Shown: positions 1,404 through 59,175 of the stretch, in pieces
Numbering within the stretch: position 1 is the first letter of the stretch
Layout: each line of letters begins with the position of its first letter
IMG/VR virus record: IMGVR_UViG_3300047321_000238
Coordinates: 62,001-126,000 of that record
Direction: 5' to 3' (one strand)
Length of the DNA stretch: 64,000 nucleotides
Made by a program: the position numbers and the translations under genes
The notes under the pieces: generated by a model
The model's input: only the letters and a program-made list of their open reading frames with translations
Databases searched by the model: none
Told to the model about the DNA's origin: nothing

Positions 1404-1906
1404 CCCCCTTCGGGGATAGATCAGTGCCATTCCTTCGGATAAATATAAATAAGCTCCCTCCGCTCGCAGTCCCTTCGGGAACAAATAAACTAACTTCGTT
1501 AGTAGAAATAAGCTTCGCAGACTAATCGTGCGGATTCTATGAGAGCTATATTGAAACTAAGTTCTTATTGAACTATTTAGTTCTCATAATAAATTCGCTA
1601 CACTCATAGTCTTAGTCATGCGTGTTATCTGAGATTATCCTTAATCCCAAATCTCATCTTATCCCAATAAACTCACTACGTTCGTAGTTTTAATCATGCG
1701 GATATCTTGAGACATTTATATGCTTACTCATAGTTATAAACTTACTTACGAGTGACATTATAAATTCAATTAGCTATTAATTAGCTACTACATACATACA
1801 ACAAGGGGGAAATAATAGGAGACTTGCGTTTAATCCATTTCTCAGGTTAAATCTATATGCTCTGTATGTATAAAATAAGCTACGCAGTTTAATCATGCGT
1901 ATTATT
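1404..1906. repeat. Cluster of TTC-loop mini inverted repeats and AAATAAGCT(T/A)CGCAG...ATC(A/G)TGCG repeats
   Basis: CCCC-TTC-GGGG, TCC-TTC-GGA, TCCC-TTC-GGGA, ACTAAC-TTC-GTTAGT; repeat copies at 1506 and 1873, partial copies at 1447 and 1681. Confidence 0.75.
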
Positions 1907-2180
1907 CGTGTAACTCTAATGCTGAAAATAGAGTGTAGACTTAGCAGGTTCTTCTATTGCTTGCTATATGTTGAACGTATAAATGGAATCCTTATATATT
2001 ATTTATGTCTGTAATAATATAAGAAGTTAGCCCAAGACATGTTGTATATATATGAGAGTGCACGCTTATGTATATATTCCTAATTAAATTATTAAATATG
2101 TATACATCCCTACTTACGAGTGAATGTATATATATAAGAATGATTTAAGCGAAAACGAAAAAATCAAAATTTGAAAGGAA

Positions 2181-2741
2181 ATGATTAAAATGGAAAAGAG
2201 AATATTTTTAGCAACAAAGAAAGAACACACAGTAGGAGTAGTGTTTAATGTAACAGAGAATAAATGTAACAGAATTCCTACAATCGTATATGAACACGCT
2301 GGACAAATGAATGGCTTCAGTGACACAAGACTTAGTGCAATGAGTGCATTAATAAAAGTAATTGAAGAAAATAATAGTACTGAACTTACAAATGTAGTAC
2401 CAGTATTTGTTAATGAAGCATTAGCAAAGTTTATAACTGATGAAACATATAAGTTCTGGATTAAGACTGGTGCAAAAAGTACTGGTGAAGTAATTAGTGA
2501 AAATGAAATGACAATACTAAAGAAGTTCGTAGAAGTTTGGAAAGAAAAAGGAGATGACTTTGTAATCAGAGATATATTTACTTGTCGTATTAATGATAAA
2601 GTAAAAGCTGACCCTGCAAAGATATCTAAATTCAAACCATACAGCAGACAAAATGACGCATACTGCAGATACTGTTGGGACGAAATTGCTAAACTATATA
2701 ATGAAACAGTTGAAGCATCTATAGCATCAGTTGCAGTTTAA
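2181..2741 (+). CDS. hypothetical protein (possible degenerate RNase H-like fold)
   Basis: ORF with GAAAGGA SD; weak resemblance to the RNase H helix region. Confidence 0.75.
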   Translation: MIKMEKRIFLATKKEHTVGVVFNVTENKCNRIPTIVYEHAGQMNGFSDTRLSAMSALIKVIEENNSTELTNVVPVFVNEALAKFITDETYKFWIKTGAKSTGEVISENEMTILKKFVEVWKEKGDDFVIRDIFTCRINDKVKADPAKISKFKPYSRQNDAYCRYCWDEIAKLYNETVEASIASVAV

Positions 2742-2843
2742 ATAAATAGATATATGAGATTGATTACTTATCGTAGTCTTTCTCATATTTTTTATGTTAT
2801 TTATGTGAAAATAATAAAACAATAAGAGGAGAGAATAAATAAA

Positions 2844-3038
2844 ATGAAAATTAATCAATCAAGAAAGTCAACACATTCAATCATGGCTCATCAAAGTTTC
2901 GAAGGAGTATTACTAATTAAAGATGGTATCAAAATGTATATACCTAAAGAATGGATTACTCAAAAAGGTAAGATAAAGAAGTATGCATTAAAAGCATTTG
3001 ATAAGTTACAAAAGGAAGAACTAAGAAAGGCAATTTAA
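2844..3038 (+). CDS. small basic hypothetical protein
   Basis: ORF track; GAGGAG upstream. Confidence 0.65.
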   Translation: MKINQSRKSTHSIMAHQSFEGVLLIKDGIKMYIPKEWITQKGKIKKYALKAFDKLQKEELRKAI

Positions 3039-3041
3039 ATT

Positions 3042-3206
3042 ATGTTCAGAATAAAATATGTAGTAAGTGGTTTGGTTAAAGAACAATTATATGAAGACAC
3101 ATTCTATGCAGTCAGTTTAAGACAAGCATGGTATTACTTTGGTAAGAAGTACGGCTTCAATATTAGGGACTTTAAGAGACTGAATAGTGGGGGAATAGCA
3201 TCATGA
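3042..3206 (+). CDS. small hypothetical protein, 54 aa (not in ORF track)
   Basis: MFRIKYVVSG...GGIAS; ATGA overlap with rnhA start. Confidence 0.6.
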   Translation: MFRIKYVVSGLVKEQLYEDTFYAVSLRQAWYYFGKKYGFNIRDFKRLNSGGIAS

Positions 3207-36093: not shown

Positions 36094-37524
36094 ATGTTAA
36101 AAGATATTAGAAAAAATCCAATTAAGTTAACTGATTGCTATAACTTATCACATGAGGAATTAAAATGTAATACAGACTTTGAAGTTTCTCATATGTATAA
36201 TAGAGCAGACGGAATGTTATTATATGGCTTTAAAGAAATTGCATTAGGTATTCTTAGTATAAAGATTACAGAAGAAATGGTTGAAGATGCAGCAGTTGAT
36301 GCTGAAGAATTAAACTTAACTTTCCCTAAAGATTTATGGATGAGAGTAGTTACAGAATGTAGAGGATATGTTCCATTAGAAGTTCAATCAGTTCCAGAAG
36401 GAACATGGTGCCCTAAAGGAACTCCATTTGCTCAAGTAAGAAATACCGTAGAAGGTTTCGGAGAAATGGTTACATGGTTTGAAGGCGTGTTTATGATGGC
36501 GTATTTCCCATCTACATGTGCAACTAGAGCATTTGAAATGAGAAACTATTTAGAAGAAAAGAAAGAACAATACGGATACGATGATAGCTTTCTATGGAGA
36601 TTTCATAGTTTTGGATTCAGAGGACATAAAAGCTTGGAAGATGCGTACTTCGCAGGAACTGCATGGTCAACATTCTTATTAGGAACAGATGATTTCCATA
36701 TAAGACAACACATGTCAGAAGATACTGTTATGGGAAGTATTGCAGCGTTAGCTCATAAAGTTACGCAACAATATGATAATGAATATGATTGTTTCATTCG
36801 TTCAATAGATTATGCAGCTGCAAGCGGTAAGAATATCGTAGCTTTAGTTATAGATACTTACAATGCATATAGAGTTATTCAAGAATATGTGTTAAAATTA
36901 GCTGAGTATGCTAAAGGAAAAGGAGTTCATATTGTATTTAGACCAGATAGTGGAGACATTTTTGGACAAGCAATGGCTATATATACAAGAGTTTCAACTG
37001 CAGGTTATAAAAATGTAAGTGTAATAATTGGAGAAGGTATGAGTTTTAATAATGCTAAATCAATGGATAAAAAATTTGAGTTAATGGGAGTGCCATTAAC
37101 ATTTATTGCTTATGGTATAGGAGCAGGATTCTATAAAGATATAGAAAGAGATACTTTAGGATGGGCAATGAAGACTGGTTATTCTAATGGAGCTCCAAGA
37201 ATGAAAGTAGTTAAGTCGGATCCATTTAAGCAATCAATACCTGGGATTGTAGATTTAATGTACGATGAAGATGATTTAATGACAGTATATATAGAAAAAG
37301 AAGATAATGCTGCTGATTCAATATATGAATGTATATATAGATATGATCTTGATCAAAATACAACACCTTCTATGAAAGACTTATCTTATATTCCTGCACA
37401 AGCTATTAAGGATAGAGCATACAATACTACAGGATATAGAGTTGGAGAAAAAATACAAGAAAGAATAATCATATCTAATGAAATTAAAGAACTTATAAAT
37501 GTAATAACAAAAAAATATGAATAA
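36094..37524 (+). CDS. nadV: nicotinamide phosphoribosyltransferase (NAMPT/NadV)
   Basis: TDCYNLSH, FHSFGFRG, GTD, AHKV, VIDTY, RPDSG, GEG, GIGAG. Confidence 0.85.
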   Translation: MLKDIRKNPIKLTDCYNLSHEELKCNTDFEVSHMYNRADGMLLYGFKEIALGILSIKITEEMVEDAAVDAEELNLTFPKDLWMRVVTECRGYVPLEVQSVPEGTWCPKGTPFAQVRNTVEGFGEMVTWFEGVFMMAYFPSTCATRAFEMRNYLEEKKEQYGYDDSFLWRFHSFGFRGHKSLEDAYFAGTAWSTFLLGTDDFHIRQHMSEDTVMGSIAALAHKVTQQYDNEYDCFIRSIDYAAASGKNIVALVIDTYNAYRVIQEYVLKLAEYAKGKGVHIVFRPDSGDIFGQAMAIYTRVSTAGYKNVSVIIGEGMSFNNAKSMDKKFELMGVPLTFIAYGIGAGFYKDIERDTLGWAMKTGYSNGAPRMKVVKSDPFKQSIPGIVDLMYDEDDLMTVYIEKEDNAADSIYECIYRYDLDQNTTPSMKDLSYIPAQAIKDRAYNTTGYRVGEKIQERIIISNEIKELINVITKKYE

Positions 37525-43141: not shown

Positions 43142-43831
43142 ATGATATTGAATAAAATAAATGATTTTTTTAAAGGATGGACAAAGCTAGATTTTGCTTG
43201 GCTATTAATAGCTAATGCAATCATGTTAGGATTATCTATCAGAAATGGTGATACAGTAGTATCTATGATATGTGCTGTAACAGGAATAGTTAGTGTTATA
43301 TTTGCAAGTAAGCAAATGACAGCTAATTATGTAGTAGGACTTATAAATGTAGCGTTATATGCTTATCTTTCATATCAAGCCAAATTATATGGAGATTTTC
43401 AATTAAATGCTTTCTTCTATGTACCAATGCAATTCATAGGATATTATATGTGGAATAAAGCTAAAAACAAATCATCAGAACATAAAGTTGAAGCTAAAAG
43501 ACTAACTGGAGAGCAAGCTATATTTATATCAGTAGGAACAATAGGAACTATATTGGTATACGCTAAAATATTAGATATGCTTAGAGGAAATATAACTTTA
43601 ATCGATTCAGCCTCTACAGTACTATCAGTGATAGCTATGATATTAATGGTTAAACAATATACTGAACAATGGTATATGTGGGTTCTTGTTAATATAGTAT
43701 CTATAGTAATGTGGGTAGTATCTTTATCACAAGGCACAGGAGATTTGGCTACATTATTAATGTGGGTAGTTTTCTTAATTAATTCTATATTTGGATTAGT
43801 TAATTGGAGAAAGGCTAGTAAGAAGGCTTAA
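43142..43831 (+). CDS. pnuC: nicotinamide riboside transporter PnuC
   Basis: LYGD, GYYMW, DSASTVLSVIAMILM, EQWYMWVLVNIVSI. Confidence 0.9.
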   Translation: MILNKINDFFKGWTKLDFAWLLIANAIMLGLSIRNGDTVVSMICAVTGIVSVIFASKQMTANYVVGLINVALYAYLSYQAKLYGDFQLNAFFYVPMQFIGYYMWNKAKNKSSEHKVEAKRLTGEQAIFISVGTIGTILVYAKILDMLRGNITLIDSASTVLSVIAMILMVKQYTEQWYMWVLVNIVSIVMWVVSLSQGTGDLATLLMWVVFLINSIFGLVNWRKASKKA

Positions 43832-46301: not shown

Positions 46302-46494
46302 TATGGTAGATAATAAAAAAGATAATGCATTTATTGAAAAAATTGCTAAAGAAATTGATGAAAATAAAATACACATAGGAATTGAAAATATATTAGAACT
46401 AGTTTATGATATGGGAGTTAAAGAAGGAAAAGCATTGGTAGTAAAAAATGCTGTTGAATTCATAAGTAAGTAAATAATCTTGAGGGGGATTAAA

Positions 46495-47553
46495 ATGAAT
46501 AAAATATCAGACATGCCAAAGAAAGGTGTATGGTTTGCTAAAGCATTACCACCACATAGAGGTCATTTAAGTACAATATTACAAGCTGCTACACAAGTAC
46601 AACAATTAGATGTAATTGTATCAGAGCATGAAGAAGGAAATGGTAAACTGTGTAGAAATGTCGGAATACCATATATGCCAGGAGCAAAAAGAGTACAATG
46701 GCTTAGTCAGGAATTAATGGACATGCCTCATATTACCGTTAAGTTACTTAATGAAAATAATATGCCTGTATATCCTAATGGATGGGATATGTGGACTCAA
46801 GAATTACAAAAAGTTGCAGGAGAAAAAATAGATATGTTTTTCTGCGGTAAAAAAGATATAGATGTATATGGACCAAAATTAAAGAGTTATTTTCCAGGAG
46901 TTAAAGTTACAGCGTATGATACAGATACTTGTTACTTTAATATATCAGCTACAGAGATCAGAAGTAATCCAATTAAGCATTGGGACTATATATTAGGACC
47001 AGCAAGACCATTCTTTGCTAAGAAAATATTAATAGCTGGAACTGAAAGCACAGGTAAGACTACTTTAACTAAAACTTTAGCTAAGATGTATCATACATCA
47101 TGGAGTGAAGAAGTAGGAAGATATTATGCAACGCAATATCTAGGAGGTAATGAAAATTACTTTACTGATGAAGACTTTACAAGAATAGCTCATTTGCAAG
47201 TTGAACAAGATCATCAAGCATTAAGAAACTGTAATAGAGTTTGTTTCTTTGATACAGACGCTACAGCAACAGATTACTTCAGTCAATTATATATGGGACA
47301 TAGCAATAGCATAGTTAGAAGCTATATAGATCCTGATAAGTATGACATAGTGTTCATGTTGAAGCCTGATGTTGAATGGGTAGATGATGGCATGAGATTA
47401 AATGGATCACAAGAGCAAAGAATTAAACTTCATAATAAATTAAAAGATATGTATGATAATTTAGGATTTAAAGTAGTTGAAGTAGGTGGAACATACCAAG
47501 AAAGACTTAAATTTATATTATCAAAAATAGATGAAATGATTGGGGGAAAATAA
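46495..47553 (+). CDS. nadR: NadR-like NMN adenylyltransferase / ribosylnicotinamide kinase
   Basis: PPHRGH (HxGH), NISATEIR, GTESTGKTT, FFDTD, WVDDGMR. Confidence 0.9.
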   Translation: MNKISDMPKKGVWFAKALPPHRGHLSTILQAATQVQQLDVIVSEHEEGNGKLCRNVGIPYMPGAKRVQWLSQELMDMPHITVKLLNENNMPVYPNGWDMWTQELQKVAGEKIDMFFCGKKDIDVYGPKLKSYFPGVKVTAYDTDTCYFNISATEIRSNPIKHWDYILGPARPFFAKKILIAGTESTGKTTLTKTLAKMYHTSWSEEVGRYYATQYLGGNENYFTDEDFTRIAHLQVEQDHQALRNCNRVCFFDTDATATDYFSQLYMGHSNSIVRSYIDPDKYDIVFMLKPDVEWVDDGMRLNGSQEQRIKLHNKLKDMYDNLGFKVVEVGGTYQERLKFILSKIDEMIGGK

Positions 47554-48132
47554 ATGAGAAAGCTATTAAGCGTAGATAAACAAACGGATAATAAATTCTT
47601 AAACATGTTTGTAGCAAACTATGAAGAAGACGGTGAAGAGTCTAAATACTTTATTGCATCAAGAAAAAAGAATGCAGAAGATTTAGATTGTATGACTGGT
47701 AAGATGGTAGCTGATGCAGTAATAATCGTTCCTGTATATACTAATGGAGATATATTATTTATTAAGCAATTTAGAAAACCTATAAATGATTATATATATG
47801 AATTTCCAGCAGGATTAATCGATGCAGGTGAAACTAGTAAACAAGCTGCAATAAGAGAGCTTCATGAAGAAACTGGATTAAGTGTAGTAAGTGCTAGAGA
47901 ATTAATCAAGCCTACGTATACATCAGTTGGAATGTCAGATGAAGCTGTAGGAATATATATAGCTGAAGTTCAAGGAGAACTATCTCAAGAATATCAAGAA
48001 AAAAGCGAGGATATAAATTTTGAAATAGTAAAAATAGATGACTTAGCAAAGTTCATTAAAGAAAACAAAGTAGCAATGCAAGCATCAATACTTTCTTTAT
48101 TCTTATATAGCATAGAAAAAGGAGAATATTAA
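47554..48132 (+). CDS. NUDIX hydrolase (ADP-ribose pyrophosphatase-like)
   Basis: KQFR, EFPAGLID.GE....AA.REL.EETG. Confidence 0.9.
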   Translation: MRKLLSVDKQTDNKFLNMFVANYEEDGEESKYFIASRKKNAEDLDCMTGKMVADAVIIVPVYTNGDILFIKQFRKPINDYIYEFPAGLIDAGETSKQAAIRELHEETGLSVVSARELIKPTYTSVGMSDEAVGIYIAEVQGELSQEYQEKSEDINFEIVKIDDLAKFIKENKVAMQASILSLFLYSIEKGEY

Positions 48133-52850: not shown

Positions 52851-52879
52851 TTGACAACTTGTCCATTGTTTGGTATATT
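52851..52879 (+). promoter_or_regulatory. sigma-A promoter driving the RNA cluster
   Basis: TTGACA-17 nt-TATATT with TG extension and A-rich UP-like region. Confidence 0.85.
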
Positions 52880-53086: not shown

Positions 53087-53173
53087 GGAAGAGTGGCCGA
53101 GATGGTTGATGGCGGCAGACTGTAAATCTGTTCTGTAAAAAGCACGTTGGTTCGAATCCAACCTTTTCCACCA
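53087..53173 (+). tRNA. tRNA-Tyr(GTA)
   Basis: Cloverleaf, long variable arm, CCA. Confidence 0.95.
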
Positions 53174-53412
53174 AAGTCTAAGGTTAAGATATATTCACTC
53201 AATTGACTTGAATTGAATAAAGTTACACATTAGGTTAGTAATACTTTGATTAAAGATATATTCATCAGAATATTGATAGTCAATTATAACTATACGTAAT
53301 ATGGATGTTTCTGAACTTCAGCCCCTGTGGTACATAAATATGTGAGAAATATCGGAGTATTCTAATTAGGAATATGTGTCTAGTAGTAGGTCGGGACTAG
53401 ACAAAATAATAT

Positions 53413-53488
53413 GGATAGATAGCTCAGATGGTAGAGCAGTGGATTGAAGATCCGCGTGTCCAAGGTTCGATTCCTTGTCTGTCCACCA
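53413..53488 (+). tRNA. tRNA-Phe(GAA)
   Basis: Cloverleaf, 76 nt, CCA. Confidence 0.95.
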
Positions 53489-53557
53489 GTAGGTTTTTGT
53501 TAGCTTTTGCCGTAGAACTCCTAGAGAGAGTCAAATCAAAAACTATCTCCACCATAT

Positions 53558-53634
53558 GGCTCTGTAGCTCAGTTGGAAGAGCATCCGTATTATTAAACGG
53601 AGTGTCGGAGGTTCAATTCCTCCCAAAGTCTCCA
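53558..53634 (+). tRNA. tRNA-like gene with 8-nt anticodon loop ATTATTAA (Asn-like?)
   Basis: D and T arms and CCA intact; TCCGT/ACGGA stem. Confidence 0.7.
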
Positions 53635-53697
53635 TTCATCCTTTTTATATTTTTATATTGTAGATACTCTCTATTATTGGGAGGGTATTTGCAACAT

Positions 53698-53772
53698 GGC
53701 TCATTAGTATAGCGGTTAGTACACTGCCCTGTCACGGCAGAAGCGGGAGTTCGATTCTCCCATAAGTCGCCA
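53698..53772 (+). tRNA. tRNA-Asp(GTC)
   Basis: Cloverleaf, CCA, one acceptor mismatch. Confidence 0.9.
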
Positions 53773-53831
53773 TAGGATTTTCTTTTGTCAGTTTCTTTCT
53801 AGATCAAAAAAGTAAACTGTAAAACCTATAT

Positions 53832-53920
53832 GGAGCAATACTCAAGTGGCTTAAGAGTCCAGTCTTGAAAACTGGTAGGCTGTAACAGGTGCGTAGGTTC
53901 GAATCCTACTTGCTCCGCCA
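53832..53920 (+). tRNA. tRNA-Ser(TGA)
   Basis: Cloverleaf, long variable arm, GCCA. Confidence 0.95.
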
Positions 53921-53986
53921 AGGCGTTAAGCCTATGTTTTCTTTAGACGTAAGTTTCTTTTCTCAAAAGCAAACACGTTGAATTAT

Positions 53987-54063
53987 GGGTTCTTAGCTCA
54001 GATGGCTAGAGCACTGGCCTCCAAATCCAGGTGTCCTAGGTTCGATTCCTAGAGGGCTCGCCA
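53987..54063 (+). tRNA. tRNA-Trp(CCA)
   Basis: Loop CT-CCA-AA, G73, CCA. Confidence 0.9.
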
Positions 54064-54140
54064 ATAAAGAGTAAAGTTGTACCGCTCTAATGTTAGTTAT
54101 TAGTGTACATCGCAAAGGAGAATGACTAACAAAACAATAT

Positions 54141-54231
54141 GGAACTGTACTCAAGAGGTTTAAGAGGAGCCCTTGCTAAGGGTTTAGACGAATTTATTCG
54201 TGCTAGGGTTCGAATCCCTACGATTCCGCCA
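54141..54231 (+). tRNA. tRNA-Ser(GCT)
   Basis: Cloverleaf, long variable arm, GCCA. Confidence 0.9.
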
Positions 54232-54570
54232 AGGGTAGTTCAACACACTTCTAGTAGAGTTTCTACAAGTGGCAAGAGTAAATGTATGCAGTTAACTTAT
54301 AAGAACATTGCATAGCAGTATAGAACCAGTGGTAATGATCCACCGATACTGCAAAAGGTTTTAATGCTTAGTAGGAACAACTAAGTAGTGTACGCTATCT
54401 ACAAAAGAGTATCCTCATGGTGCTGATACTTGAAAGATGGATAAGGGTGAACCACTTGAAACCCGATAGCAAAAGACCTAATAAGTAGCAAAATTAGGTT
54501 TAAAACTCTAAATATAATTAGGGATTAAAGCAATTACAAATGCAAGTTTAGGACTTTTATAATAGTCCTT
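54232..54570 (+). ncRNA. candidate structured ncRNA (~340 nt)
   Basis: Many nested stems (GCAGTAT/ATACTGC, GCTATC/GATAGC, ACCTAAT/ATTAGGT); no ORF. Confidence 0.45.
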
Positions 54571-54575
54571 TATAT

Positions 54576-54651
54576 GCTGAATTAGCACAATTGGCAGTGC
54601 ATCTGACTTGTAATCAGAAGGTTAAGAGTTCGAATCTCTTATTCAGCTCCA
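54576..54651 (+). tRNA. tRNA-Thr(TGT)
   Basis: Perfect cloverleaf, CCA. Confidence 0.95.
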
Positions 54652-54780
54652 AAACCAGTATTCGGTGGCAATCTAATTGCACTAGCTGACGAGGTTTGTC
54701 ACACAGAGATAGACGTTAATTCTCGGAGTCTTTATTAGGAAGACATCTAGACAGTATGGTAGGGACTGTCCAACCGATAT

Positions 54781-54855
54781 AGCATTGTTGAGGAGTGGTT
54801 TCTCGCTAGCTCAAAAAGCTAGAGCACACTGGTTCGATTCCAGTCTTTGCGACCA
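54781..54855 (+). tRNA. degenerate tRNA-like gene (loop TCAAAAA)
   Basis: D, anticodon and T stems paired, ACCA end; acceptor has 3 mismatches; no U33. Confidence 0.6.
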
Positions 54856-54993
54856 TAATCTATGTAAGTCTTCACAGATTCTAATTGTGTGAAGCCGAAA
54901 CTTATATCAACGCGGTAAGGATAAAGTATTAGATAAACCATCCTATTAGCAGAGATTACGGGTGCAGAAGTTCGTAGTTATAGCATCCACCAA

Positions 54994-55069
54994 CAGGATA
55001 TAGGACAGTTGGTAGTCCGCCACATTTGGGATGTGGAGATCCTAGGTTCGAGTCCTAGTATCCTGACCA
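54994..55069 (+). tRNA. tRNA-Pro(TGG)
   Basis: C1-G72, A73, TT-TGG-GA loop, CCA. Confidence 0.95.
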
Positions 55070-55305
55070 AGGTCGTCTGTAGTTTAAGCGAATTCTTTAC
55101 TAACTAGCTTAACAAAAAACTTACTGTTGATTCAAAGCATGCCTGCGATCATGGCCAATGATTTGTTAGTTTTAATCATAAGCTGAATCAAAGTGTTCTT
55201 AGGAAGTACAATATGCATATCGTTCAAAAGCGAAAGATTTCATAGATGGCGTTTATAATAAGAACAACAATAAAGTAATGAGCCACCTGCCATTACTTTA
55301 AATAT

Positions 55306-55383
55306 CAGGATGTAGCTCAGTTGGTAGAGTGCTGGCACGATTATAGCCAGAAGTCGTAGGTTCAATCCCTACTGTCCTGACCA
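55306..55383 (+). tRNA. tRNA-Pro-like body with 9-nt anticodon loop ACGATTATA
   Basis: CAGGATG/TGTCCTG-ACCA; CTGGC/GCCAG stem. Confidence 0.8.
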
Positions 55384-55390
55384 AAGTGTG

Positions 55391-55471
55391 GGGAGCACAT
55401 ATTGCGGAAAGCTTTGTAACCAAAAGTAAGGAATGTTGTTCTGGCATAAAGTTCCTTTGCTCCCATGGTTA
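55391..55471 (+). ncRNA. novel ~74-nt branched RNA, copy 1, plus ATGGTTA tail
   Basis: GGGAGCA/TGCTCCC closing stem; covaries with copy 2. Confidence 0.75.
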
Positions 55472-55667
55472 TTTACTTGGTAGCTATACCAAGACTATAA
55501 AATAGTCGTATCTTAGGAACGTAAGCACTAAGCGTCATCAGGCTAAAGACTAATAATTAATTTATTAGAGATGAGAACCCTGACCAATGTATTGAAAGCT
55601 TAACGGATGTTGGAAACGTTAGTTTTTAGGGTGATAACCTTGAGTAGTGTCTAAATAATCATAATAT

Positions 55668-55746
55668 CAGGATGTAGCTCAGTTGGTAGAGCACTGGCAT
55701 TAATAGGAGCCAGAGGTCGTAGGTTTGAGTCCTACTGTCCTGACCA
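55668..55746 (+). tRNA. tRNA-Pro-like body with 10-nt anticodon loop ATTAATAGGA
   Basis: Same acceptor and anticodon stems as 55306. Confidence 0.8.
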
Positions 55747-55754
55747 TATCTGTC

Positions 55755-55836
55755 GAGAGTACAGTTTGCAGAAAAGCTTAAGAACCTAAAGCAGGGAATG
55801 TTGTTCTGGTATAAAGTTCCCTTACTCTCATGGTTA
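55755..55836 (+). ncRNA. novel ~74-nt branched RNA, copy 2, plus ATGGTTA tail
   Basis: GAGAGTA/TACTCTC closing stem. Confidence 0.75.
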
Positions 55837-55840
55837 ACAA

Positions 55841-55915
55841 TGGGGAATAGTCAAGCGGAAAGACAGTGGATTTTGATTCCACGATGCGAAGGTTCGAACC
55901 CTTCTTCCTCAGCCA
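55841..55915 (+). tRNA. tRNA-Gln(TTG)
   Basis: U1-A72, G73, TT-TTG-AT loop, CCA. Confidence 0.95.
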
Positions 55916-56010
55916 CCTACAATAGTAGGAGTTTATTATAAGTCCGATTTCAATCTTTTATTAGCTATTAATGGCTCGCCAAAGTAATCATTAATAGCTA
56001 ATATAATATC

Positions 56011-56086
56011 ATGAAGGTAGGATAGTTGGTAGTCCACCAGTTTGTGGCACTGGTTTACGCGAGTTCGAGTCTCGTCCTTCATTCCA
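56011..56086 (+). tRNA. tRNA-His(GTG), atypical acceptor end
   Basis: TT-GTG-GC loop; A1-U72, U73, no genomic G-1. Confidence 0.85.
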
Positions 56087-56087
56087 T

Positions 56088-56164
56088 GGCTTCATAGCTC
56101 AGTTGGCTAGAGCAATCGGTTCATACCCGAAAGATCATTGGTTCAAGTCCAATTGAAGCCACCA
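56088..56164 (+). tRNA. tRNA-Met(CAT), elongator type
   Basis: GGTTCATACCCG arm as in Firmicute elongator Met; CCA. Confidence 0.9.
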
Positions 56165-56372
56165 TAATAAAGAAGATATTCAATATTTGTAAATAATTTC
56201 TCCCGTAGAATGTGTTTATGTGTGTGGTTGAATGTCTTTTTTATTTTCTAAATATTTACCGTTTATACTTAAACTTATTAGATACTTGCAAACAATACTG
56301 AATAAAACTGTTGTGGCAAGAGTATATAAATGGTATGGTGTAAGTATCTAATAATACAAAAAGGAGTATACT

Positions 56373-56696
56373 ATGAGAGAACACACTTTAATATTAGAAA
56401 AAGTAACACCTAGTAAAACTGAATTAGTAGATAACAAATTTTACAGATTAGAATTCACTGGTTTAAATAATCAAATATATACTGCATTTGTTGACAAAAA
56501 AGATGTTGATAATGAAGTTATACTTTTGAATGATACATTTGATGTAATAAAAGTAGATATATTTAGAGATAATTTAAATGAATCAGTTAATGATAATATA
56601 TTTGAGACACAACCTCATTTAAAGTATGAAGGAGTCTATTCTTATATTACAATAGATATAAATCATACAGATCCAGCAGTGTTCAATAGAATATAA
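56373..56696 (+). CDS. hypothetical protein embedded in the tRNA cluster
   Basis: AAGGAG SD. Confidence 0.75.
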   Translation: MREHTLILEKVTPSKTELVDNKFYRLEFTGLNNQIYTAFVDKKDVDNEVILLNDTFDVIKVDIFRDNLNESVNDNIFETQPHLKYEGVYSYITIDINHTDPAVFNRI

Positions 56697-56869
56697 TGAA
56701 AAATCACCGAGAAATAAGCCTGATTATGCCAATTAGTTCGTCACCTCTAGTTGAAGGTTCATTCTAATAGGTACGAGTTTGCTACGTTAAATGTTTGTAA
56801 TCAGTAAAAGTTCTAAAATGTTATTATGAATTCGAATAGTAATGACGTGCTAGTGTGCACAGGTTGACT

Positions 56870-56990
56870 AGTAACATGGAGAAGGCGGTCCATCTTCGAT
56901 AGAAGACCAGGGGTTCGATTCCCTTTGTTATCGCCACAAAACGGTAATAGTTTGGTACGGATTAGAGATTCGACTCCTCTACTCTCCACA
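56870..56990 (+). ncRNA. tRNA-like element with two T-loop hairpins
   Basis: AGGGG-TTCGATT-CCCTT and TAGAG-ATTCGACTC-CTCTA; internal GCCA. Confidence 0.6.
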
Positions 56991-56996
56991 AAATAT

Positions 56997-57091
56997 GTGG
57001 GTATGGTGAAATTGGCAGACACAGGCAAAAAGCGGCAACTCAGATGATATGCTCAGTTGTGTGAAGGTTCGAATCCTTCTACCCTACATCA
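56997..57091 (+). tRNA. tRNA-Leu-like body with collapsed anticodon arm
   Basis: GTGAAATTGGCAGACAC D arm, long variable stem, perfect T arm; no anticodon stem; ends ATCA. Confidence 0.65.
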
Positions 57092-57092
57092 T

Positions 57093-57173
57093 GGGTTAAT
57101 AGTTCAATTGGTTAGAATACCGTTTGCTTACAAACAACGGAGATGTAGGTTCGAGTCCTACAAGGGCCTGCCA
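57093..57173 (+). tRNA. tRNA-like gene with 11-nt loop containing CTTACAA (Val-like)
   Basis: CCGTT/AACGG stem, T arm, GCCA; weak acceptor. Confidence 0.65.
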
Positions 57174-57187
57174 AATAAATATAATAT

Positions 57188-57256
57188 GGGCCGATAGCTC
57201 AGTGGCAGAGCATATGACTTTTACTCATATACGTGGGTTCGATTCCCAATAGCCTA
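57188..57256 (+). pseudogene. degenerate tRNA-Lys-like gene, 8-nt loop CTTTTTAC, no CCA
   Basis: D and T arms present; acceptor mismatched. Confidence 0.6.
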
Positions 57257-57429
57257 TAATAGTTATTATCACAATTATAAGAATCACAGAGTGGGTTCTT
57301 GGTATTTAGGAATGACGTCAAAGGTAATGCATGTTAGTGGGACGTTGAAGGGTGCTCGTAACTTTAGCTAAGTTAGGAAGAGCATACCTAGTAGTTGTCT
57401 GAGGGTTGGCAATCACAAAAAAATAATAT

Positions 57430-57500
57430 GAGTTTGTAGCTCAGTGGTAGAGCATAGGAATTTTAATCCTAGACATAGGTTCGATTCCTGTCATAGCTCA
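57430..57500 (+). tRNA. tRNA-Lys(TTT), somewhat degenerate, CCA not encoded
   Basis: TAGGA-ATTTTAA-TCCTA arm; T arm intact. Confidence 0.7.
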
Positions 57501-57862
57501 AAAACAAAAGGACATTAATCATGAGGAGGTAAATAGGTCTTATGATTTAAATTTTTGGAGTTATAATTGAGGGAATATAAATAGCCAAAAACCCGTTTCT
57601 CCTTAGTGCCTATTTGCTAATGCGAGAAGGTTATAACTTGTGAGTATAGAAAGTCCTCTATACTTGATAATGAGAATAGTTGCCCGTATTCCCTTGTGGT
57701 TAAGACAATTATTCAATAGTTCGTGAGGCTACCAGTCTGGCAACAGATGAGAGTTTGTGGTAATCTCGAAACCACCAAATCGACAAGTGAGTGAAAAGCT
57801 CACAAAAAAAATCCTAATTCTCTTCTAATCGAAAGAGCAAGTTTTAGTATGCTTGCTCTTTT
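57501..57862 (+). ncRNA. candidate structured ncRNA ending in a terminator
   Basis: AGTATAGA/TCTATACT, GAATAGTTG/CAATTATTC, TCTG-GCAA-CAGA, GTGAG/CTCAC; AAAGAGCAAG/CTTGCTCTTT hairpin. Confidence 0.45.
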
Positions 57863-57869
57863 ATATTAT

Positions 57870-57952
57870 GCCGATATAGTTCAAGGTGAGCACTAAGGGA
57901 GCTCCGCTAACGTGGCTTAGAAGTGTAGGTTCGATTCCTATAGTCGGCACCA
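57870..57952 (+). tRNA. tRNA-Thr-like body with 18-nt insertion-type anticodon loop
   Basis: GCCGATA...AGTCGGC-ACCA; CTAAG/CTTAG stem around GGAGCTCCGCTAACGTGG. Confidence 0.75.
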
Positions 57953-58374: not shown

Positions 58375-59175
58375 ATGATTAAAAAAACAATAGCAATTCT
58401 ATTAATGATTGTTGTAACAATACCATCATTGAAAACAAATGCTACTGTTTTAGTACCTGAGCAAAACAGTACAACAACAATTAAAGTTGAGGACAAATTA
58501 TTAAATCCTACAAGTTATCAGTACCTTACAGTGACAGATTTCAGATTGAAGAATTTTATTGAAATTGTCGAAGAAGCGAAAAAACTAAAAGAGGAGATAA
58601 AAGCAGCACAAGAAAAACAAGCAGCAATAGATAAAGCAAGACAAGCCGTAATCGATGACAATAGTAGAAAGAATAATGTTCATGTTTATCAAGAAAATCT
58701 TACTAGTGTGTCAGGAATTACAGTAGAAGAATTAAATCAAGTATTTTATAAAATTGGAAAACCAAAAATGGCAAAGTATTCTCAAGCATTTATTGATGCA
58801 GAGAAACAATACGGAGTCAATGCACTATTTATAGCTTCAATAGTTGCACAAGAATCTGGCTGGGCCACCAAAGCTGGTGGAACTAATGGTACTAACTTAA
58901 CTGGGCATGCAGTATATAATGCTCAAGCGACAGGAACTACTTTCAATTCAGGTTATGAAGGTATACTAGAAACCGCAAGACTATTAAAAGAAGATTACTT
59001 GACATCAAGTGGAAAATATTTTAATGGATATAGCGTAGAAGATGTAAATCTACATTATTGTTTATTACAAGATATGAAGACTACTGATTATAAATGGTCG
59101 GTAGCTATTACAAATATAGAAAATACTTTTGAAAAAGTTTATCAACACGATGTAAAAACATTAGAACAAATCTAA
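58375..59175 (+). CDS. secreted glucosaminidase (GH73-like) cell-wall hydrolase
   Basis: Signal peptide; AEKQYGVNALFIASIVAQESGW, NLTG. Confidence 0.85.
   Translation: MIKKTIAILLMIVVTIPSLKTNATVLVPEQNSTTTIKVEDKLLNPTSYQYLTVTDFRLKNFIEIVEEAKKLKEEIKAAQEKQAAIDKARQAVIDDNSRKNNVHVYQENLTSVSGITVEELNQVFYKIGKPKMAKYSQAFIDAEKQYGVNALFIASIVAQESGWATKAGGTNGTNLTGHAVYNAQATGTTFNSGYEGILETARLLKEDYLTSSGKYFNGYSVEDVNLHYCLLQDMKTTDYKWSVAITNIENTFEKVYQHDVKTLEQI

What the first reader, a model, noticed from the sequence alone, without database searches (positions are those of the whole stretch)
53558..57952. Series of tRNA-like genes with intact elbows but rebuilt anticodon loops
Seen: loops of 8 (53558), 9 (55306), 10 (55668), 11 (57093), 8 (57188) and 18 nt (57870), a U33-less loop (54781) and a collapsed arm (56997). 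D arms, T arms, anticodon stems and mostly CCA are retained. Random decay should hit all arms, so damage concentrated at the anticodon suggests selection. Known: host defences and toxins (PrrC, VapC, PARIS/AriB) cut anticodon loops, and phage tRNAs can counter them. Inference: non-decoding tRNA mimics acting as nuclease decoys, synthetase/T-box/RelA modulators, or frameshift suppressors.
Basis: partly seen in the sequence, partly recalled or inferred. Interest (0 to 1): 0.85.

Follow-up and report, generated by a model that had tools for sequence, protein, structure and literature searches.

The report
Conserved non-decoding tRNA mimics in phage
A large uncultivated phage carries, beside 11 normal tRNA genes, about ten tRNA-shaped genes that cannot read codons normally, and at least six of them are kept in shape by evolution in related phages, so they are working RNAs of unknown job and not dead genes.

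Summary
The window is part of a 248-kb uncultivated phage contig. Positions 53087-57952 hold a same-strand array of 11 canonical tRNAs and at least 10 non-canonical tRNA-like genes. One is wrong: 57188 has a normal 7-nt Lys loop, and its defects lie in the acceptor stem, T stem and missing CCA.

Two related phages (L087, L088) settle the main question. The 9/10-15-nt-loop pair (A3/A4), the 18-nt-loop gene (A10), the 11-nt-loop gene (A7) and the collapsed-arm gene (A6) are as conserved as real tRNAs. Their stems carry compensatory changes. The enlarged loops persist, and A10 has an invariant palindromic core GGAGCUCC. One element (A5/A5b) is a permuted, YrlA-like tRNA module. By contrast, 53558 (A1) and 54781 (A2) are specific to this phage and look degenerate.

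So selection for non-decoding tRNA mimics is supported, but the function is unknown. In relatives the array also holds RtcB, a Ro60-like gene and Y-RNA-like modules, which points to RNA repair or quality control, or to decoys. Frameshift suppression is unlikely because loop length varies between orthologues.

The parts
52851..52879 (+). Promoter-like site upstream of the array (TTGACA, 17 nt, TATATT, with a TG extension)
   Evidence: 11 of 12 matches, the best site in the region. It lies in a block that is 83% identical to L087.
53087..53173 (+). Canonical tRNA-Tyr(GUA)
53413..53488 (+). Canonical tRNA-Phe(GAA)
53558..53634 (+). A1: a cloverleaf with CCA, discriminator U73 and an 8-nt loop AUUAUUAA. 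It is specific to this phage.
   Evidence: The positional orthologue in L087 is a canonical tRNA-Asn(GUU) with the same 3' flank. No relative shares its anticodon arm.
53698..53772 (+). Canonical tRNA-Asp(GUC)
53832..53920 (+). Canonical tRNA-Ser(UGA)
   Evidence: 91% identical to L087.
53987..54063 (+). Canonical tRNA-Trp(CCA)
54141..54231 (+). Canonical tRNA-Ser(GCU)
54576..54651 (+). Canonical tRNA-Thr(UGU)
54781..54855 (+). A2: a tRNA-like gene with loop UCAAAAA (C33), 4 of 7 acceptor pairs and CCA. Probably a degenerate copy.
   Evidence: Absent between Thr and Pro in L087.
54994..55069 (+). Canonical tRNA-Pro(UGG)
55306..55383 (+). A3: a Pro-type body with CCA, all 21 pairs formed, and a 9-nt loop ACGAUUAUA
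   Evidence: L087 788-865 has the same scaffold with a 9-nt loop and a fully compensated anticodon stem.
55391..55464 (+). Structured RNA directly 3' of A3, duplicated after A4
   Evidence: 22 pairs, 3 of them with compensatory double changes between the two copies. No Rfam match.
55668..55746 (+). A4: a Pro-type body with CCA, a 10-nt loop AUUAAUAGGA and an unusual T loop UUUGAGU
   Evidence: The orthologue L087 3213-3296 is 88% identical, has the same T loop and a 15-nt loop, and its closing pair changed from C-G to A-U.
55755..55829 (+). Second copy of the structured RNA, 3' of A4
55841..55915 (+). Canonical tRNA-Gln(UUG)
56011..56086 (+). tRNA-His(GUG). The cloverleaf is canonical, but the discriminator is U.
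56088..56164 (+). Canonical tRNA-Met(CAU)
   Evidence: 99% identical to L087 and 96% to L088.
56373..56696 (+). ORF107: a conserved small protein that splits the array. Its function is unknown.
   Evidence: Orthologues in L087 (60% aa) and L088 (52% aa) sit at the same place. No Pfam match. The model has low confidence, is rich in beta strands and has no significant fold match.
56878..56987 (+). A5/A5b: one composite RNA. Its parts in order are a terminal stem, a 5-bp hairpin with a 4-nt loop (56893-56906), a T arm (56909-56925), a closed 8-bp 'acceptor' hairpin whose loop contains CCA (56926-56949), and a small D-like arm. This is a permuted tRNA topology, like YrlA.
   Evidence: Rfam tRNA scores only 23 bits. 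The alignment with L088 4528-4657 shows the 3' acceptor strand pairing with the downstream strand, with 2 compensated pairs. The 5' strand of the supposed cloverleaf is not supported in L088. 78% identical to L088. Absent in L087.
56997..57091 (+). A6: a class-II-like tRNA shape in which the anticodon arm is reduced to a 2-bp stem around AAAAA, next to a 9-bp long arm. The 3' end is A-UCA.
   Evidence: It is 93% identical to L087. None of the 7 substitutions breaks a pair, and the D stem shows a compensated U-A to C-G change. Positions 57022-57059 are invariant.
57093..57173 (+). A7: a tRNA-like gene with an 11-nt loop UGCUUACAAAC. The acceptor stem is largely broken in this phage. The 3' end is G-CCA.
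   Evidence: The L087 orthologue has a 10-nt loop with the shared core GCUUAYAAA, a compensated anticodon stem, 2 compensated T-stem pairs and 6 of 7 acceptor pairs.
57188..57256 (+). A8: a Lys(UUU)-like gene with a normal 7-nt loop CUUUUAC, an imperfect short acceptor stem and no CCA
   Evidence: 95% identical to L087. The L088 orthologue is a canonical tRNA-Lys scoring 61 bits, with the same loop.
57430..57500 (+). A9: a second Lys(UUU)-like gene with loop AUUUUAA, a 3-nt variable region, an imperfect acceptor stem and no CCA. It evolves fast.
   Evidence: Only 56% identical to the element at the same place in L087.
57870..57952 (+). A10: a cloverleaf with A73-CCA and an 18-nt anticodon loop whose first 8 nt are the palindrome GGAGCUCC
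   Evidence: Orthologues lie at L087 5472-5554 and L088 4881-4966. The loop is 18 nt in all three and the core is invariant. 61 of 63 cells are paired, and 5 pairs carry compensatory double changes.

Best explanation
This is the tRNA array of an uncultivated phage of about 248 kb. Besides 11 working tRNAs it encodes a set of tRNA-derived non-coding RNAs.

In at least six of them (A3, A4, A5/A5b, A6, A7, A10) evolution preserves the parts of a tRNA that proteins and RNase P recognise: the acceptor helix, the D/T elbow and often CCA. The anticodon arm has been turned into something that cannot decode:
- loops of 9 to 18 nt, one with an invariant self-complementary core;
- a vestigial 2-bp arm beside a conserved long arm;
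- a permuted module like the tRNA-like domain of bacterial Y RNAs.

Inferred mechanism:
- The mimics are transcribed with the tRNAs from the promoter-like site at 52851.
- The tRNA-processing machinery cuts them out. Nearly all are preceded by the same AUAU leader as the real tRNAs, and most carry CCA.
- They then act off the ribosome as ligands, scaffolds or decoys for tRNA-binding proteins.

The context in relatives is an RtcB ligase, a Ro60-like protein and Y-RNA-like modules inside the same array. This makes an RNA repair or quality-control particle the leading specific guess, ahead of decoys against tRNA-directed host defence.

A1, A2 and probably A9 are lineage-specific degenerate copies.
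For: Shown:
- Inventory of the elements and their arm pairing.
- Orthologues in L087 and L088 in conserved order around ORF107.
- A3/A4 family: 84 of 84 cells paired, and 4 pairs with changes on both sides.
- A10 family: 61 of 63 cells paired, 5 pairs compensated, and the same 18-nt loop with an invariant GGAGCUCC core in three phages.
- A6: 7 substitutions, none disruptive, and a 38-nt invariant core.
- A7: compensated anticodon and T stems, with the enlarged loop retained.
- A5/A5b: a closed acceptor hairpin with 2 compensations.
- Identity to L087 is 0.88 (A4), 0.93 (A6) and 0.87 (A10). Canonical tRNAs range from 0.58 to 0.99, and the ORF107 DNA is 0.71.
- GC content of the mimics is 0.43-0.51 in a genome of 0.29.
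- The AUAU leader is shared with the canonical tRNAs.

Context:
- RtcB lies next to the array in L087.
- In L088 a DUF2828/DUF7788 gene sits inside the array. Its structure model matches Ro60/TROVE structures. It is followed by permuted tRNA modules, one of which matches Rfam YrlA at 40 bits.
- Y RNAs with tRNA-like domains that RNase P, the CCA-adding enzyme, TruB and DusA recognise are known in bacteria and phages (PMC4201824).
- Ro/TROVE proteins with a tRNA-like partner have been noted in jumbo phages (PMC7824862).
Against: - Only two relatives were found, so the covariation rests on 2 to 4 sequences per element. The counting tool itself warns that related sequences can beat its shuffles without any structure.
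- There are no expression data.
- Neither RtcB nor a Ro60-like gene lies within these 64 kb, and I could not read the rest of the contig.
- Rfam YrlA scores only 19 bits in the window, at the junction of A7 and A8.
- A5/A5b is missing from the closest relative.
- The acceptor stem of A7 is broken in this phage.
- A1 and A2 have no orthologues.
- Nothing ties any element to a particular protein partner.
Confidence: 0.6

Rival explanations
1. Ordinary decay. The odd genes are pseudo-tRNAs left by duplication and turnover in a phage tRNA array. Damage appears concentrated in the anticodon loop only because tRNA-like genes are recognised by their intact elbows.
For: - A2 has 4 of 7 acceptor pairs and no orthologue.
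- A1 sits where relatives have a normal tRNA-Asn, and its loop looks like a 3-nt duplication.
- A9 is only 56% identical to its positional counterpart.
- A8 and A9 lack CCA and have imperfect acceptor stems.
- Fragments with only a T-like or only a D-like arm exist at 56938-56992 and 57350-57420.
Against: - For A3, A4, A6, A7 and A10 the stems covary, the enlarged loops persist across phages, and identity equals that of real tRNAs and exceeds that of ORF107 and the spacers.
- GC content stays near 0.5 in a genome of 0.29.
Confidence: 0.15
2. Insert-bearing pre-tRNAs. The extra loop nucleotides are short intron-like inserts, of the kind reported as 'enigmatic introns' in megaphage tRNAs. A nuclease removes them and a ligase such as RtcB rejoins the halves, giving decoding tRNAs.
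For: - Lak megaphage tRNAs carry conserved inserts, including a tRNA inside a tRNA (10.1101/356790).
- In L004 and L005 a complete tRNA-like gene sits in the anticodon loop of an outer tRNA, and removing it leaves the Lys loop CUUUUAA.
- Many phage arrays contain tRNA matches 115-194 nt long.
- RtcB lies next to the array in L087.
Against: - No excision from the loops of A3, A4, A7 or A10 gives a 7-nt loop with U33 and a purine at position 37 that is conserved between orthologues.
- A4's loop is 10 nt here and 15 nt in L087, with no conserved anticodon.
- No splicing endonuclease and no bulge-helix-bulge motif was seen.
- The inserts are far too short for group I introns.
Confidence: 0.1
3. 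Processing punctuation only. The tRNA shapes serve merely as RNase P and 3'-end cutting signals that release the structured RNAs lying between them.
For: - The RNA 3' of A3 and A4 is structured, with 3 compensated pairs.
- Several spacers fold better than shuffled sequence.
- The AUAU leader is kept.
Against: - The non-tRNA parts of the mimics are their most conserved parts: the GGAGCUCC core of A10 and the 38-nt core of A6. A mere cutting signal would not need them.
- The flank RNA of A4 is poorly conserved in L087, at 0.52 identity.
Confidence: 0.1
4. Expanded-anticodon decoders: frameshift suppressors or quadruplet readers.
For: - A1 has an 8-nt loop, as classic +1 frameshift suppressor tRNAs do.
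- A3 and L087 788-865 share a central AUU in their 9-nt loops.
Against: - Loop length is not conserved: 10 vs 15 nt and 11 vs 10 nt.
- An 18-nt loop cannot present an anticodon.
- A1 is specific to this phage and has lost the Asn discriminator G73.
- The ORF map of the window gives no sign of genes that need frameshifting, though it was inspected only by eye.
Confidence: 0.04

Closest known systems
YrlA-type bacterial and phage Y RNAs, the tRNA-like partners of Ro60/Rsr (Rfam RF02553; PMC4201824)
   Same: - They are tRNA-derived non-coding RNAs that keep the T arm, D arm and an acceptor-like helix but have no decoding anticodon.
- tRNA enzymes recognise them.
- They are encoded beside Ro60 and often RtcB.
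- A5/A5b has the same permuted order (T arm, closed acceptor hairpin, D arm), and relative L088 has such modules after a Ro60-like gene.
   Different: - A3, A4, A6, A7 and A10 are not permuted. They have free 5' and 3' ends with a discriminator and CCA, like real tRNAs.
- They keep an anticodon stem that carries an oversized loop.
- No window element reaches the Rfam threshold.
- No Ro60-like gene lies in these 64 kb.
tRNAs with 'enigmatic introns' in Lak megaphages, including a tRNA within a tRNA (10.1101/356790)
   Same: - Phage tRNA genes with conserved extra sequence in the anticodon loop, found in large gut-type phages.
   Different: - The inserts here are short (2 to 11 extra nt).
- They vary in length between orthologues.
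- Removing them leaves no recognisable anticodon loop.
Phage tRNAs with anticodon-loop substitutions proposed to evade host anticodon nucleases (PMC10264068)
   Same: - The variation is concentrated in the anticodon loop of phage tRNAs.
- A8 and its orthologues keep a Lys loop with C38 (CUUUUAC) in three phages.
   Different: Those tRNAs keep 7-nt loops and still decode. The mimics here cannot.
Small stable RNAs (species 1 and 2) in the phage T4 tRNA gene cluster (from my own knowledge, not checked here)
   Same: Non-tRNA structured RNAs that are co-encoded and co-processed with a phage tRNA cluster and whose function is unknown.
   Different: They are not tRNA-shaped, and no homology was tested.
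+1 frameshift suppressor tRNAs with 8-nt anticodon loops (SufB2, SufJ; PMC4238358 was listed but not read)
   Same: An extra nucleotide in the anticodon loop of an otherwise intact tRNA, as in A1.
   Different: Suppressors keep a defined extended anticodon and their charging identity. Here loop lengths run to 18 nt and vary between orthologues.

Membership tests
tRNA (Rfam RF00005) | Cloverleaf with a 7-bp acceptor stem, D arm, anticodon stem and T arm that scores above the family threshold (29 bits) | tested here: met
   - Scores in bits: A1 50.7, A2 39.2, A3 52.0, A4 56.7, A7 32.0, A8 43.1, A9 46.5, A10 36.4.
- A5 scores 23.3 bits and A6 has no tRNA match, so these two do not meet it.
tRNA (functional decoder) | A 7-nt anticodon loop with U33 and a purine at position 37 | tested here: not met
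   - Loop lengths are 8, 9, 10, 11 and 18 nt (A1, A3, A4, A7, A10).
- A2 has C33, A5 has a 4-nt loop, and A6 has no anticodon arm.
- Only A8 and A9 meet this feature.
YrlA / Y RNA tRNA-like domain (RF02553) | Permuted order: T arm, then a closed acceptor-like hairpin, then a D arm, all inside a terminal stem | tested here: met
   Met for A5/A5b only: an 8-bp closed hairpin with 2 compensated pairs relative to L088. The other elements have the normal tRNA order.
YrlA / Y RNA tRNA-like domain (RF02553) | Score at or above the Rfam gathering threshold (69 bits) | tested here: not met
   - The best score in the window is 19 bits, at the A7/A8 junction.
- L088 reaches 40 bits.
- None of 11 other Ro60-like phage loci scored at the gathering threshold.
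YrlA / Y RNA tRNA-like domain (RF02553) | Encoded within a few kb of a Ro60/TROVE gene on the same strand | tested here: inconclusive
   - No homologue of the L088 Ro60-like gene, or of L087's RtcB, lies in the window.
- The rest of the contig could not be read.
- In L088 the feature is met: the DUF2828/DUF7788 gene lies at 1654-3144 and its model matches Ro60 structures at E 1e-8.
YrlA / Y RNA tRNA-like domain (RF02553) | Binding by a Ro60 protein to a conserved helix of the RNA | not testable with these tools
   This needs immunoprecipitation or a gel-shift assay.
Intron-bearing phage tRNA (Lak type) | Removing the insert restores a canonical 7-nt anticodon loop | tested here: not met
   - It holds for the nested tRNA in L004 and L005, which leaves CUUUUAA.
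- For A3, A4, A7 and A10 I found no excision conserved between orthologues that gives U33 and a purine at 37. This was by inspection.
Frameshift-suppressor tRNA | An enlarged loop of fixed size with a defined extended anticodon, conserved among relatives | tested here: not met
   A4 has 10 vs 15 nt and A7 has 11 vs 10 nt. A1 has no orthologue with the same loop.
Pseudogene (neutral decay) | Substitutions fall on stems and loops alike, and divergence matches that of the spacers | tested here: not met
   - Not met for A3, A4, A6, A7 and A10.
- A2 is compatible with decay, and A1 and A9 may be.

The most novel reading that the evidence does not exclude
A10-type RNAs, and perhaps A4 and A6, may be a new class of phage-encoded tRNA mimic that ends in CCA. 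In this reading the anticodon loop has been replaced by a conserved recognition element, which in A10 is an invariant self-complementary 8-mer able to form a kissing dimer. The mimics would use the tRNA body to enter tRNA-handling pathways and the new loop to capture or regulate a specific partner. That partner could be a host tRNA-directed defence nuclease or a Ro60/RtcB repair particle. If so, many 'pseudo-tRNAs' in large phages would be active players in the phage-host conflict.
Probability: 0.2. Interest if true: 0.85.

Novelty: new variant of a known kind. Interest (0 to 1): 0.6.

Why it matters
Large phages often carry 'pseudo' or 'undetermined' tRNAs that are usually written off as decaying genes or prediction noise. 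Here several of them are conserved and covary like functional RNAs while being unable to decode. They sit in arrays that, in relatives, also hold RtcB, a Ro60-like protein and Y-RNA-like modules.

If that holds, phage tRNA arrays are hubs for tRNA-mimicking regulators or decoys. That bears on why phages carry tRNA genes at all, on how phages and hosts fight over tRNA, and on how tRNA genes in viral genomes should be annotated. The elements are short and well defined, so the question can be tested directly at the bench.

Tried and rejected
Searches for relatives that failed:
- Megablast and blastn of the array against 50,697 annotated phages gave only generic tRNA matches.
- A homologue search with ORF107 found only itself. 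Its orthologues turned up later by tblastn.
- DNA probes for the A3/A4 flank, the A1 anticodon arm and the A10 core found only the window's own contig in IMG/VR.
- The A10 core found nothing in JGI metagenomes with the strict probe. The loose probe gave 14 hits without tRNA context, which I treat as chance.
- Three small contigs carrying the lysozyme-like gene held PcfJ genes but no tRNAs.
- ClpX-based loci gave one distant syntenic relative, L008, whose array is mostly outside the fetched stretch.

Readings considered and dropped:
- The idea that the second half of the array (56870-57952) is a tRNA graveyard. I held it until relatives showed A6, A8 and A10 to be 87-95% conserved.
- A7 plus A8 as a YrlA-like module (Rfam 19 bits). 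The cross-pairing is not conserved in L087.
- A10 as a D-armless tRNA-Leu(AAG), which is ARAGORN's reading. L088 loses those pairs without compensation, whereas the D stem covaries.
- A10's insert as a fragment of tRNA-Ser. The only support is a 70% match over 27 nt, which is too weak.

Tests that gave nothing:
- Spacer folding z-scores are mixed and not decisive.
- The ORF107 structure model has no significant match.
- The other two GGAGCTCC sites in the window lie in coding sequence and show no extended complementarity to A10.
- A custom covariance model for the permuted modules was not built, because the helix registers differ in the MAFFT alignment.

Full report
WHAT THE WINDOW IS

The window is part of IMG/VR contig IMGVR_UViG_3300047321_000238, which is 247,883 bp long. 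Window position equals contig position minus 62,000. The sequence is about 29% G+C and nearly all genes lie on the + strand. One large protein is about 60% identical to proteins of Bacillus Tsarbomba-like myoviruses, but no annotated phage is close at the DNA level. The window also carries NAD-salvage genes, ClpP and ClpX, and a lysozyme-like gene. It is therefore an uncultivated jumbo phage of a low-G+C host.

CHECK OF THE OBSERVATION

ARAGORN and the Rfam tRNA model find a same-strand array from 53087 to 57952. A script confirmed the pairs in each arm.

Eleven genes are canonical: Tyr, Phe, Asp, Ser(UGA), Trp, Ser(GCU), Thr, Pro, Gln, His and Met. All of them encode CCA.

The non-canonical genes are:
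- A1 (53558): 8-nt loop.
- A2 (54781): loop UCAAAAA with C33, and 4 of 7 acceptor pairs.
- A3 (55306): 9-nt loop.
- A4 (55668): 10-nt loop.
- A5 (56870): anticodon hairpin with a 4-nt loop.
- A5b (56938): half of a tRNA.
- A6 (56997): no real anticodon arm.
- A7 (57093): 11-nt loop and a broken acceptor stem.
- A8 (57188): normal Lys loop, imperfect acceptor stem, no CCA.
- A9 (57430): a second Lys-like gene, no CCA.
- A10 (57870): 18-nt loop.

The statement that the arms and CCA are retained holds cleanly only for A1, A3, A4 and A10.

FIRST IMPRESSION, AND WHY IT WAS NOT ENOUGH

Within this genome alone the picture is ambiguous. Everything after ORF107 (56373-56696) is non-canonical, with defects in every arm, and there are stray T-like and D-like fragments. 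That looks like a graveyard.

Other facts argued against simple decay:
- A3 and A4 are tandem copies that differ in almost every loop position but in no stem pair.
- Each is followed by a structured RNA with three compensated pairs.
- The odd genes keep about 0.5 G+C in a genome of 0.29.

FINDING RELATIVES

DNA probes and ORF107 found nothing at first. The lysozyme-like protein just downstream of the array (58375-59175) had relatives at 79% and 59% identity on large contigs. I fetched these as L087 and L088. blastn shows a colinear array in both, and ORF107 has orthologues at the same place. L089, L090 and L008 are more distant.

ELEMENT-BY-ELEMENT COMPARISON

A3 and A4
- L087 has two genes on the same Pro-like scaffold.
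- One has a 9-nt loop and a completely different anticodon stem that is fully compensated.
- The other is 88% identical to A4. It has the same odd T loop (UUUGAGU) and a loop of 15 nt instead of 10.
- Across the four sequences all 84 cells pair, and 4 pairs changed on both sides.

A10
- The loop is 18 nt in the window, L087 and L088. Its first 8 nt, GGAGCUCC, and the anticodon stem are invariant.
- The acceptor stem is rewritten with full compensation. Overall 61 of 63 cells pair, and 5 pairs carry double changes.
- The D stem covaries. That rules out ARAGORN's alternative reading of A10 as a Leu tRNA.

A6
- It is 93% identical to L087.
- None of the 7 substitutions breaks a pair, and one D-stem pair is compensated.
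- The 38 nt that replace the anticodon arm and form the long arm are invariant.

A7
- The enlarged loop persists (11 nt here, 10 nt in L087) with the shared core GCUUAYAAA.
- The anticodon stem and two T-stem pairs are compensated.
- The L087 copy has a good acceptor stem.

A5/A5b
- In L088 the supposed 5' acceptor strand does not pair.
- Instead the 3' strand pairs with the strand downstream, giving 8 bp closed by a loop that contains CCA, with two compensations.
- This is the permuted layout of the tRNA-like domain of YrlA Y RNAs.

A8
- It is 95% identical to L087.
- Its L088 orthologue is a canonical tRNA-Lys with the same CUUUUAC loop, so A8 may still be a Lys tRNA of unusual shape.

A1, A2 and A9
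- A1 sits where L087 has a normal tRNA-Asn(GUU), with the same 3' flank. Its loop reads like an AUU duplication, and it has U73 instead of G73.
- A2 is absent from L087.
- A9 is poorly conserved.

Overall identity to L087 is 0.74-0.95 for A4, A6, A7, A8 and A10. Canonical tRNAs range from 0.58 to 0.99, and the ORF107 DNA is 0.71.

CONTEXT IN RELATIVES AND IN OTHER PHAGES

L087 has an RtcB ligase gene directly upstream of the array and a GIY-YIG endonuclease gene inside it.

L088 has a DUF2828/DUF7788 gene inside the array.
- Its AlphaFold model (mean pLDDT 79) matches TROVE/Ro60 structures as the ten best PDB hits, including a phage Ro60.
- The gene is followed by about 1 kb of repeated units that contain permuted tRNA modules. 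Several have the loop N-CCA-AUAU, which is the same junction seen between neighbouring tRNAs.
- One module matches Rfam YrlA at 40 bits.

In 11 other phage loci the Ro60-like gene always lies inside a same-strand tRNA array. Several of those arrays contain tRNA matches of 115-194 nt.

Phages that share the Pro-like 5' half show more extreme cases:
- L004 and L005 have a complete tRNA-like gene nested in the anticodon loop of an outer tRNA.
- L006 has a replacement of about 70 nt in place of the anticodon arm.

The literature gives three points of reference:
- Y RNAs with tRNA-like domains occur near Ro60 in more than 250 bacteria and phages (PMC4201824).
- Ro/TROVE proteins with a tRNA-like partner are noted in some jumbo phages (PMC7824862).
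- Lak megaphage tRNAs carry conserved 'enigmatic introns' (10.1101/356790).

INTERPRETATION

Shown: at least six elements are conserved, structurally constrained RNAs that keep a tRNA body and lack a usable anticodon loop.

Inferred:
- They are co-transcribed from the promoter-like site at 52851.
- They are processed like tRNAs, given the shared AUAU leader and CCA.
- They act off the ribosome through the parts they retain, plus a new element in place of the anticodon.

The new elements are the most conserved parts of A6 and A10. That argues for a specific partner and against a role as a cutting signal only. The only contextual lead is the RtcB, Ro60-like and Y-RNA-like neighbourhood in relatives, so I rank an RNA repair or quality-control particle first and decoys against tRNA-directed defence second. 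Neither was tested.

RIVALS

- Decay fits A2 and perhaps A1 and A9, but not the rest.
- Intron-like inserts that are spliced out remain possible, but no conserved excision restores an anticodon loop.
- Frameshift decoding is unlikely, because loop length varies between orthologues.
- Punctuation alone does not explain the conserved loop cores.

NOVELTY AND LIMITS

tRNA mimics (Y RNAs) and insert-bearing phage tRNAs are both known. Conserved, non-permuted tRNA mimics that end in CCA and carry oversized anticodon loops have not, to my knowledge, been described. In particular I found no report of one with an invariant palindromic core, neither in the papers I searched nor in Rfam. I rate this a new variant of a known kind.

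The limits are:
- Only two informative relatives were found.
- There are no expression data.
- I could not read the rest of the contig.

Noticed in passing
window 55391-55464 and 55755-55829: A structured RNA of about 75 nt follows each of A3 and A4. The two copies share 22 predicted pairs, 3 of them with compensatory double changes. There is no Rfam match, and the RNA is poorly conserved in L087 (identity 0.52).
   Followed up: partly
L004 2095-2204 (-) and L005 8030-8139 (-): A complete 75-nt tRNA-like gene sits inside the anticodon loop of an outer tRNA. It has a perfect 7-bp acceptor stem, CCA and an 8-nt loop. Removing it leaves the Lys loop CUUUUAA. The arrangement is conserved in both contigs.
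   Followed up: partly
L005 9472-9528 (-): An HDV-like ribozyme match (HDV-F-prausnitzii, 40.5 bits, just under the threshold of 44) lies directly 3' of a tRNA-Ile(UAU) that lacks CCA and has a long variable region. This is the arrangement described for theta ribozymes.
   Followed up: no
L088 1654-3144 and 3150-4200: The predicted structure of the DUF2828/DUF7788 protein matches Ro60/TROVE. The gene is followed by about 8 tandem repeat units with a shared motif close to TAACAGCAATT. At least four of the units contain permuted tRNA modules. In 11 other phage loci the same gene always sits inside a tRNA array.
   Followed up: partly
window 56165-56372: The 208-nt spacer upstream of ORF107 is 92% identical to L087. 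That is far more than the ORF itself (71%) or the other spacers. It also folds well (z = -4.9 against mononucleotide shuffles). It may be a promoter or leader, or another RNA.
   Followed up: no
window, 5' of nearly every tRNA and tRNA-like gene (e.g. 53408-53412, 55301-55305, 57183-57187): A conserved (A)AUAU leader ends exactly at position -1 of most canonical and non-canonical genes. It is also present in L004, L005, L008, L087 and L088. It reappears as N-CCA-AUAU in the loops of the permuted modules in L088.
   Followed up: partly
window 37189, 42047, 57898: GGAGCTCC occurs 3 times, against 0.11 expected. The two sites outside A10 lie in coding sequence (Gly-Ala-Pro codons) and show no extended complementarity to the A10 loop.
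   Followed up: yes
window 56011-56086: tRNA-His has discriminator U and a C at position -1, instead of the usual bacterial G(-1):C73 pair. It is only 67% identical to the L087 copy.
   Followed up: no
window 36094-37524, 43142-43831, 46480-47553, 47554-48132: An NAD salvage set: a nicotinate phosphoribosyltransferase-like gene, a PnuC-type NMN transporter, an AAA_28 (NadR-like) gene and a NUDIX gene. This matches what has been reported for gut jumbo phages.
   Followed up: no
window 57832-57862: A terminator-like hairpin followed by a run of T lies directly 5' of A10. A10 may therefore have its own transcription unit, or the hairpin may be a processing element.
   Followed up: no
L008 331-395: A distant syntenic relative (247-kb contig) has a tRNA-like gene whose anticodon arm is reduced to the palindrome ATACATATGTAT. 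It has no CCA.
   Followed up: no
L096 4582-5027; L107 2083-2211; L093 10129-10212: GOLLD, RAGATH-33 and skipping-rope RNAs are found in phage tRNA arrays that also carry the Ro60-like gene.
   Followed up: no
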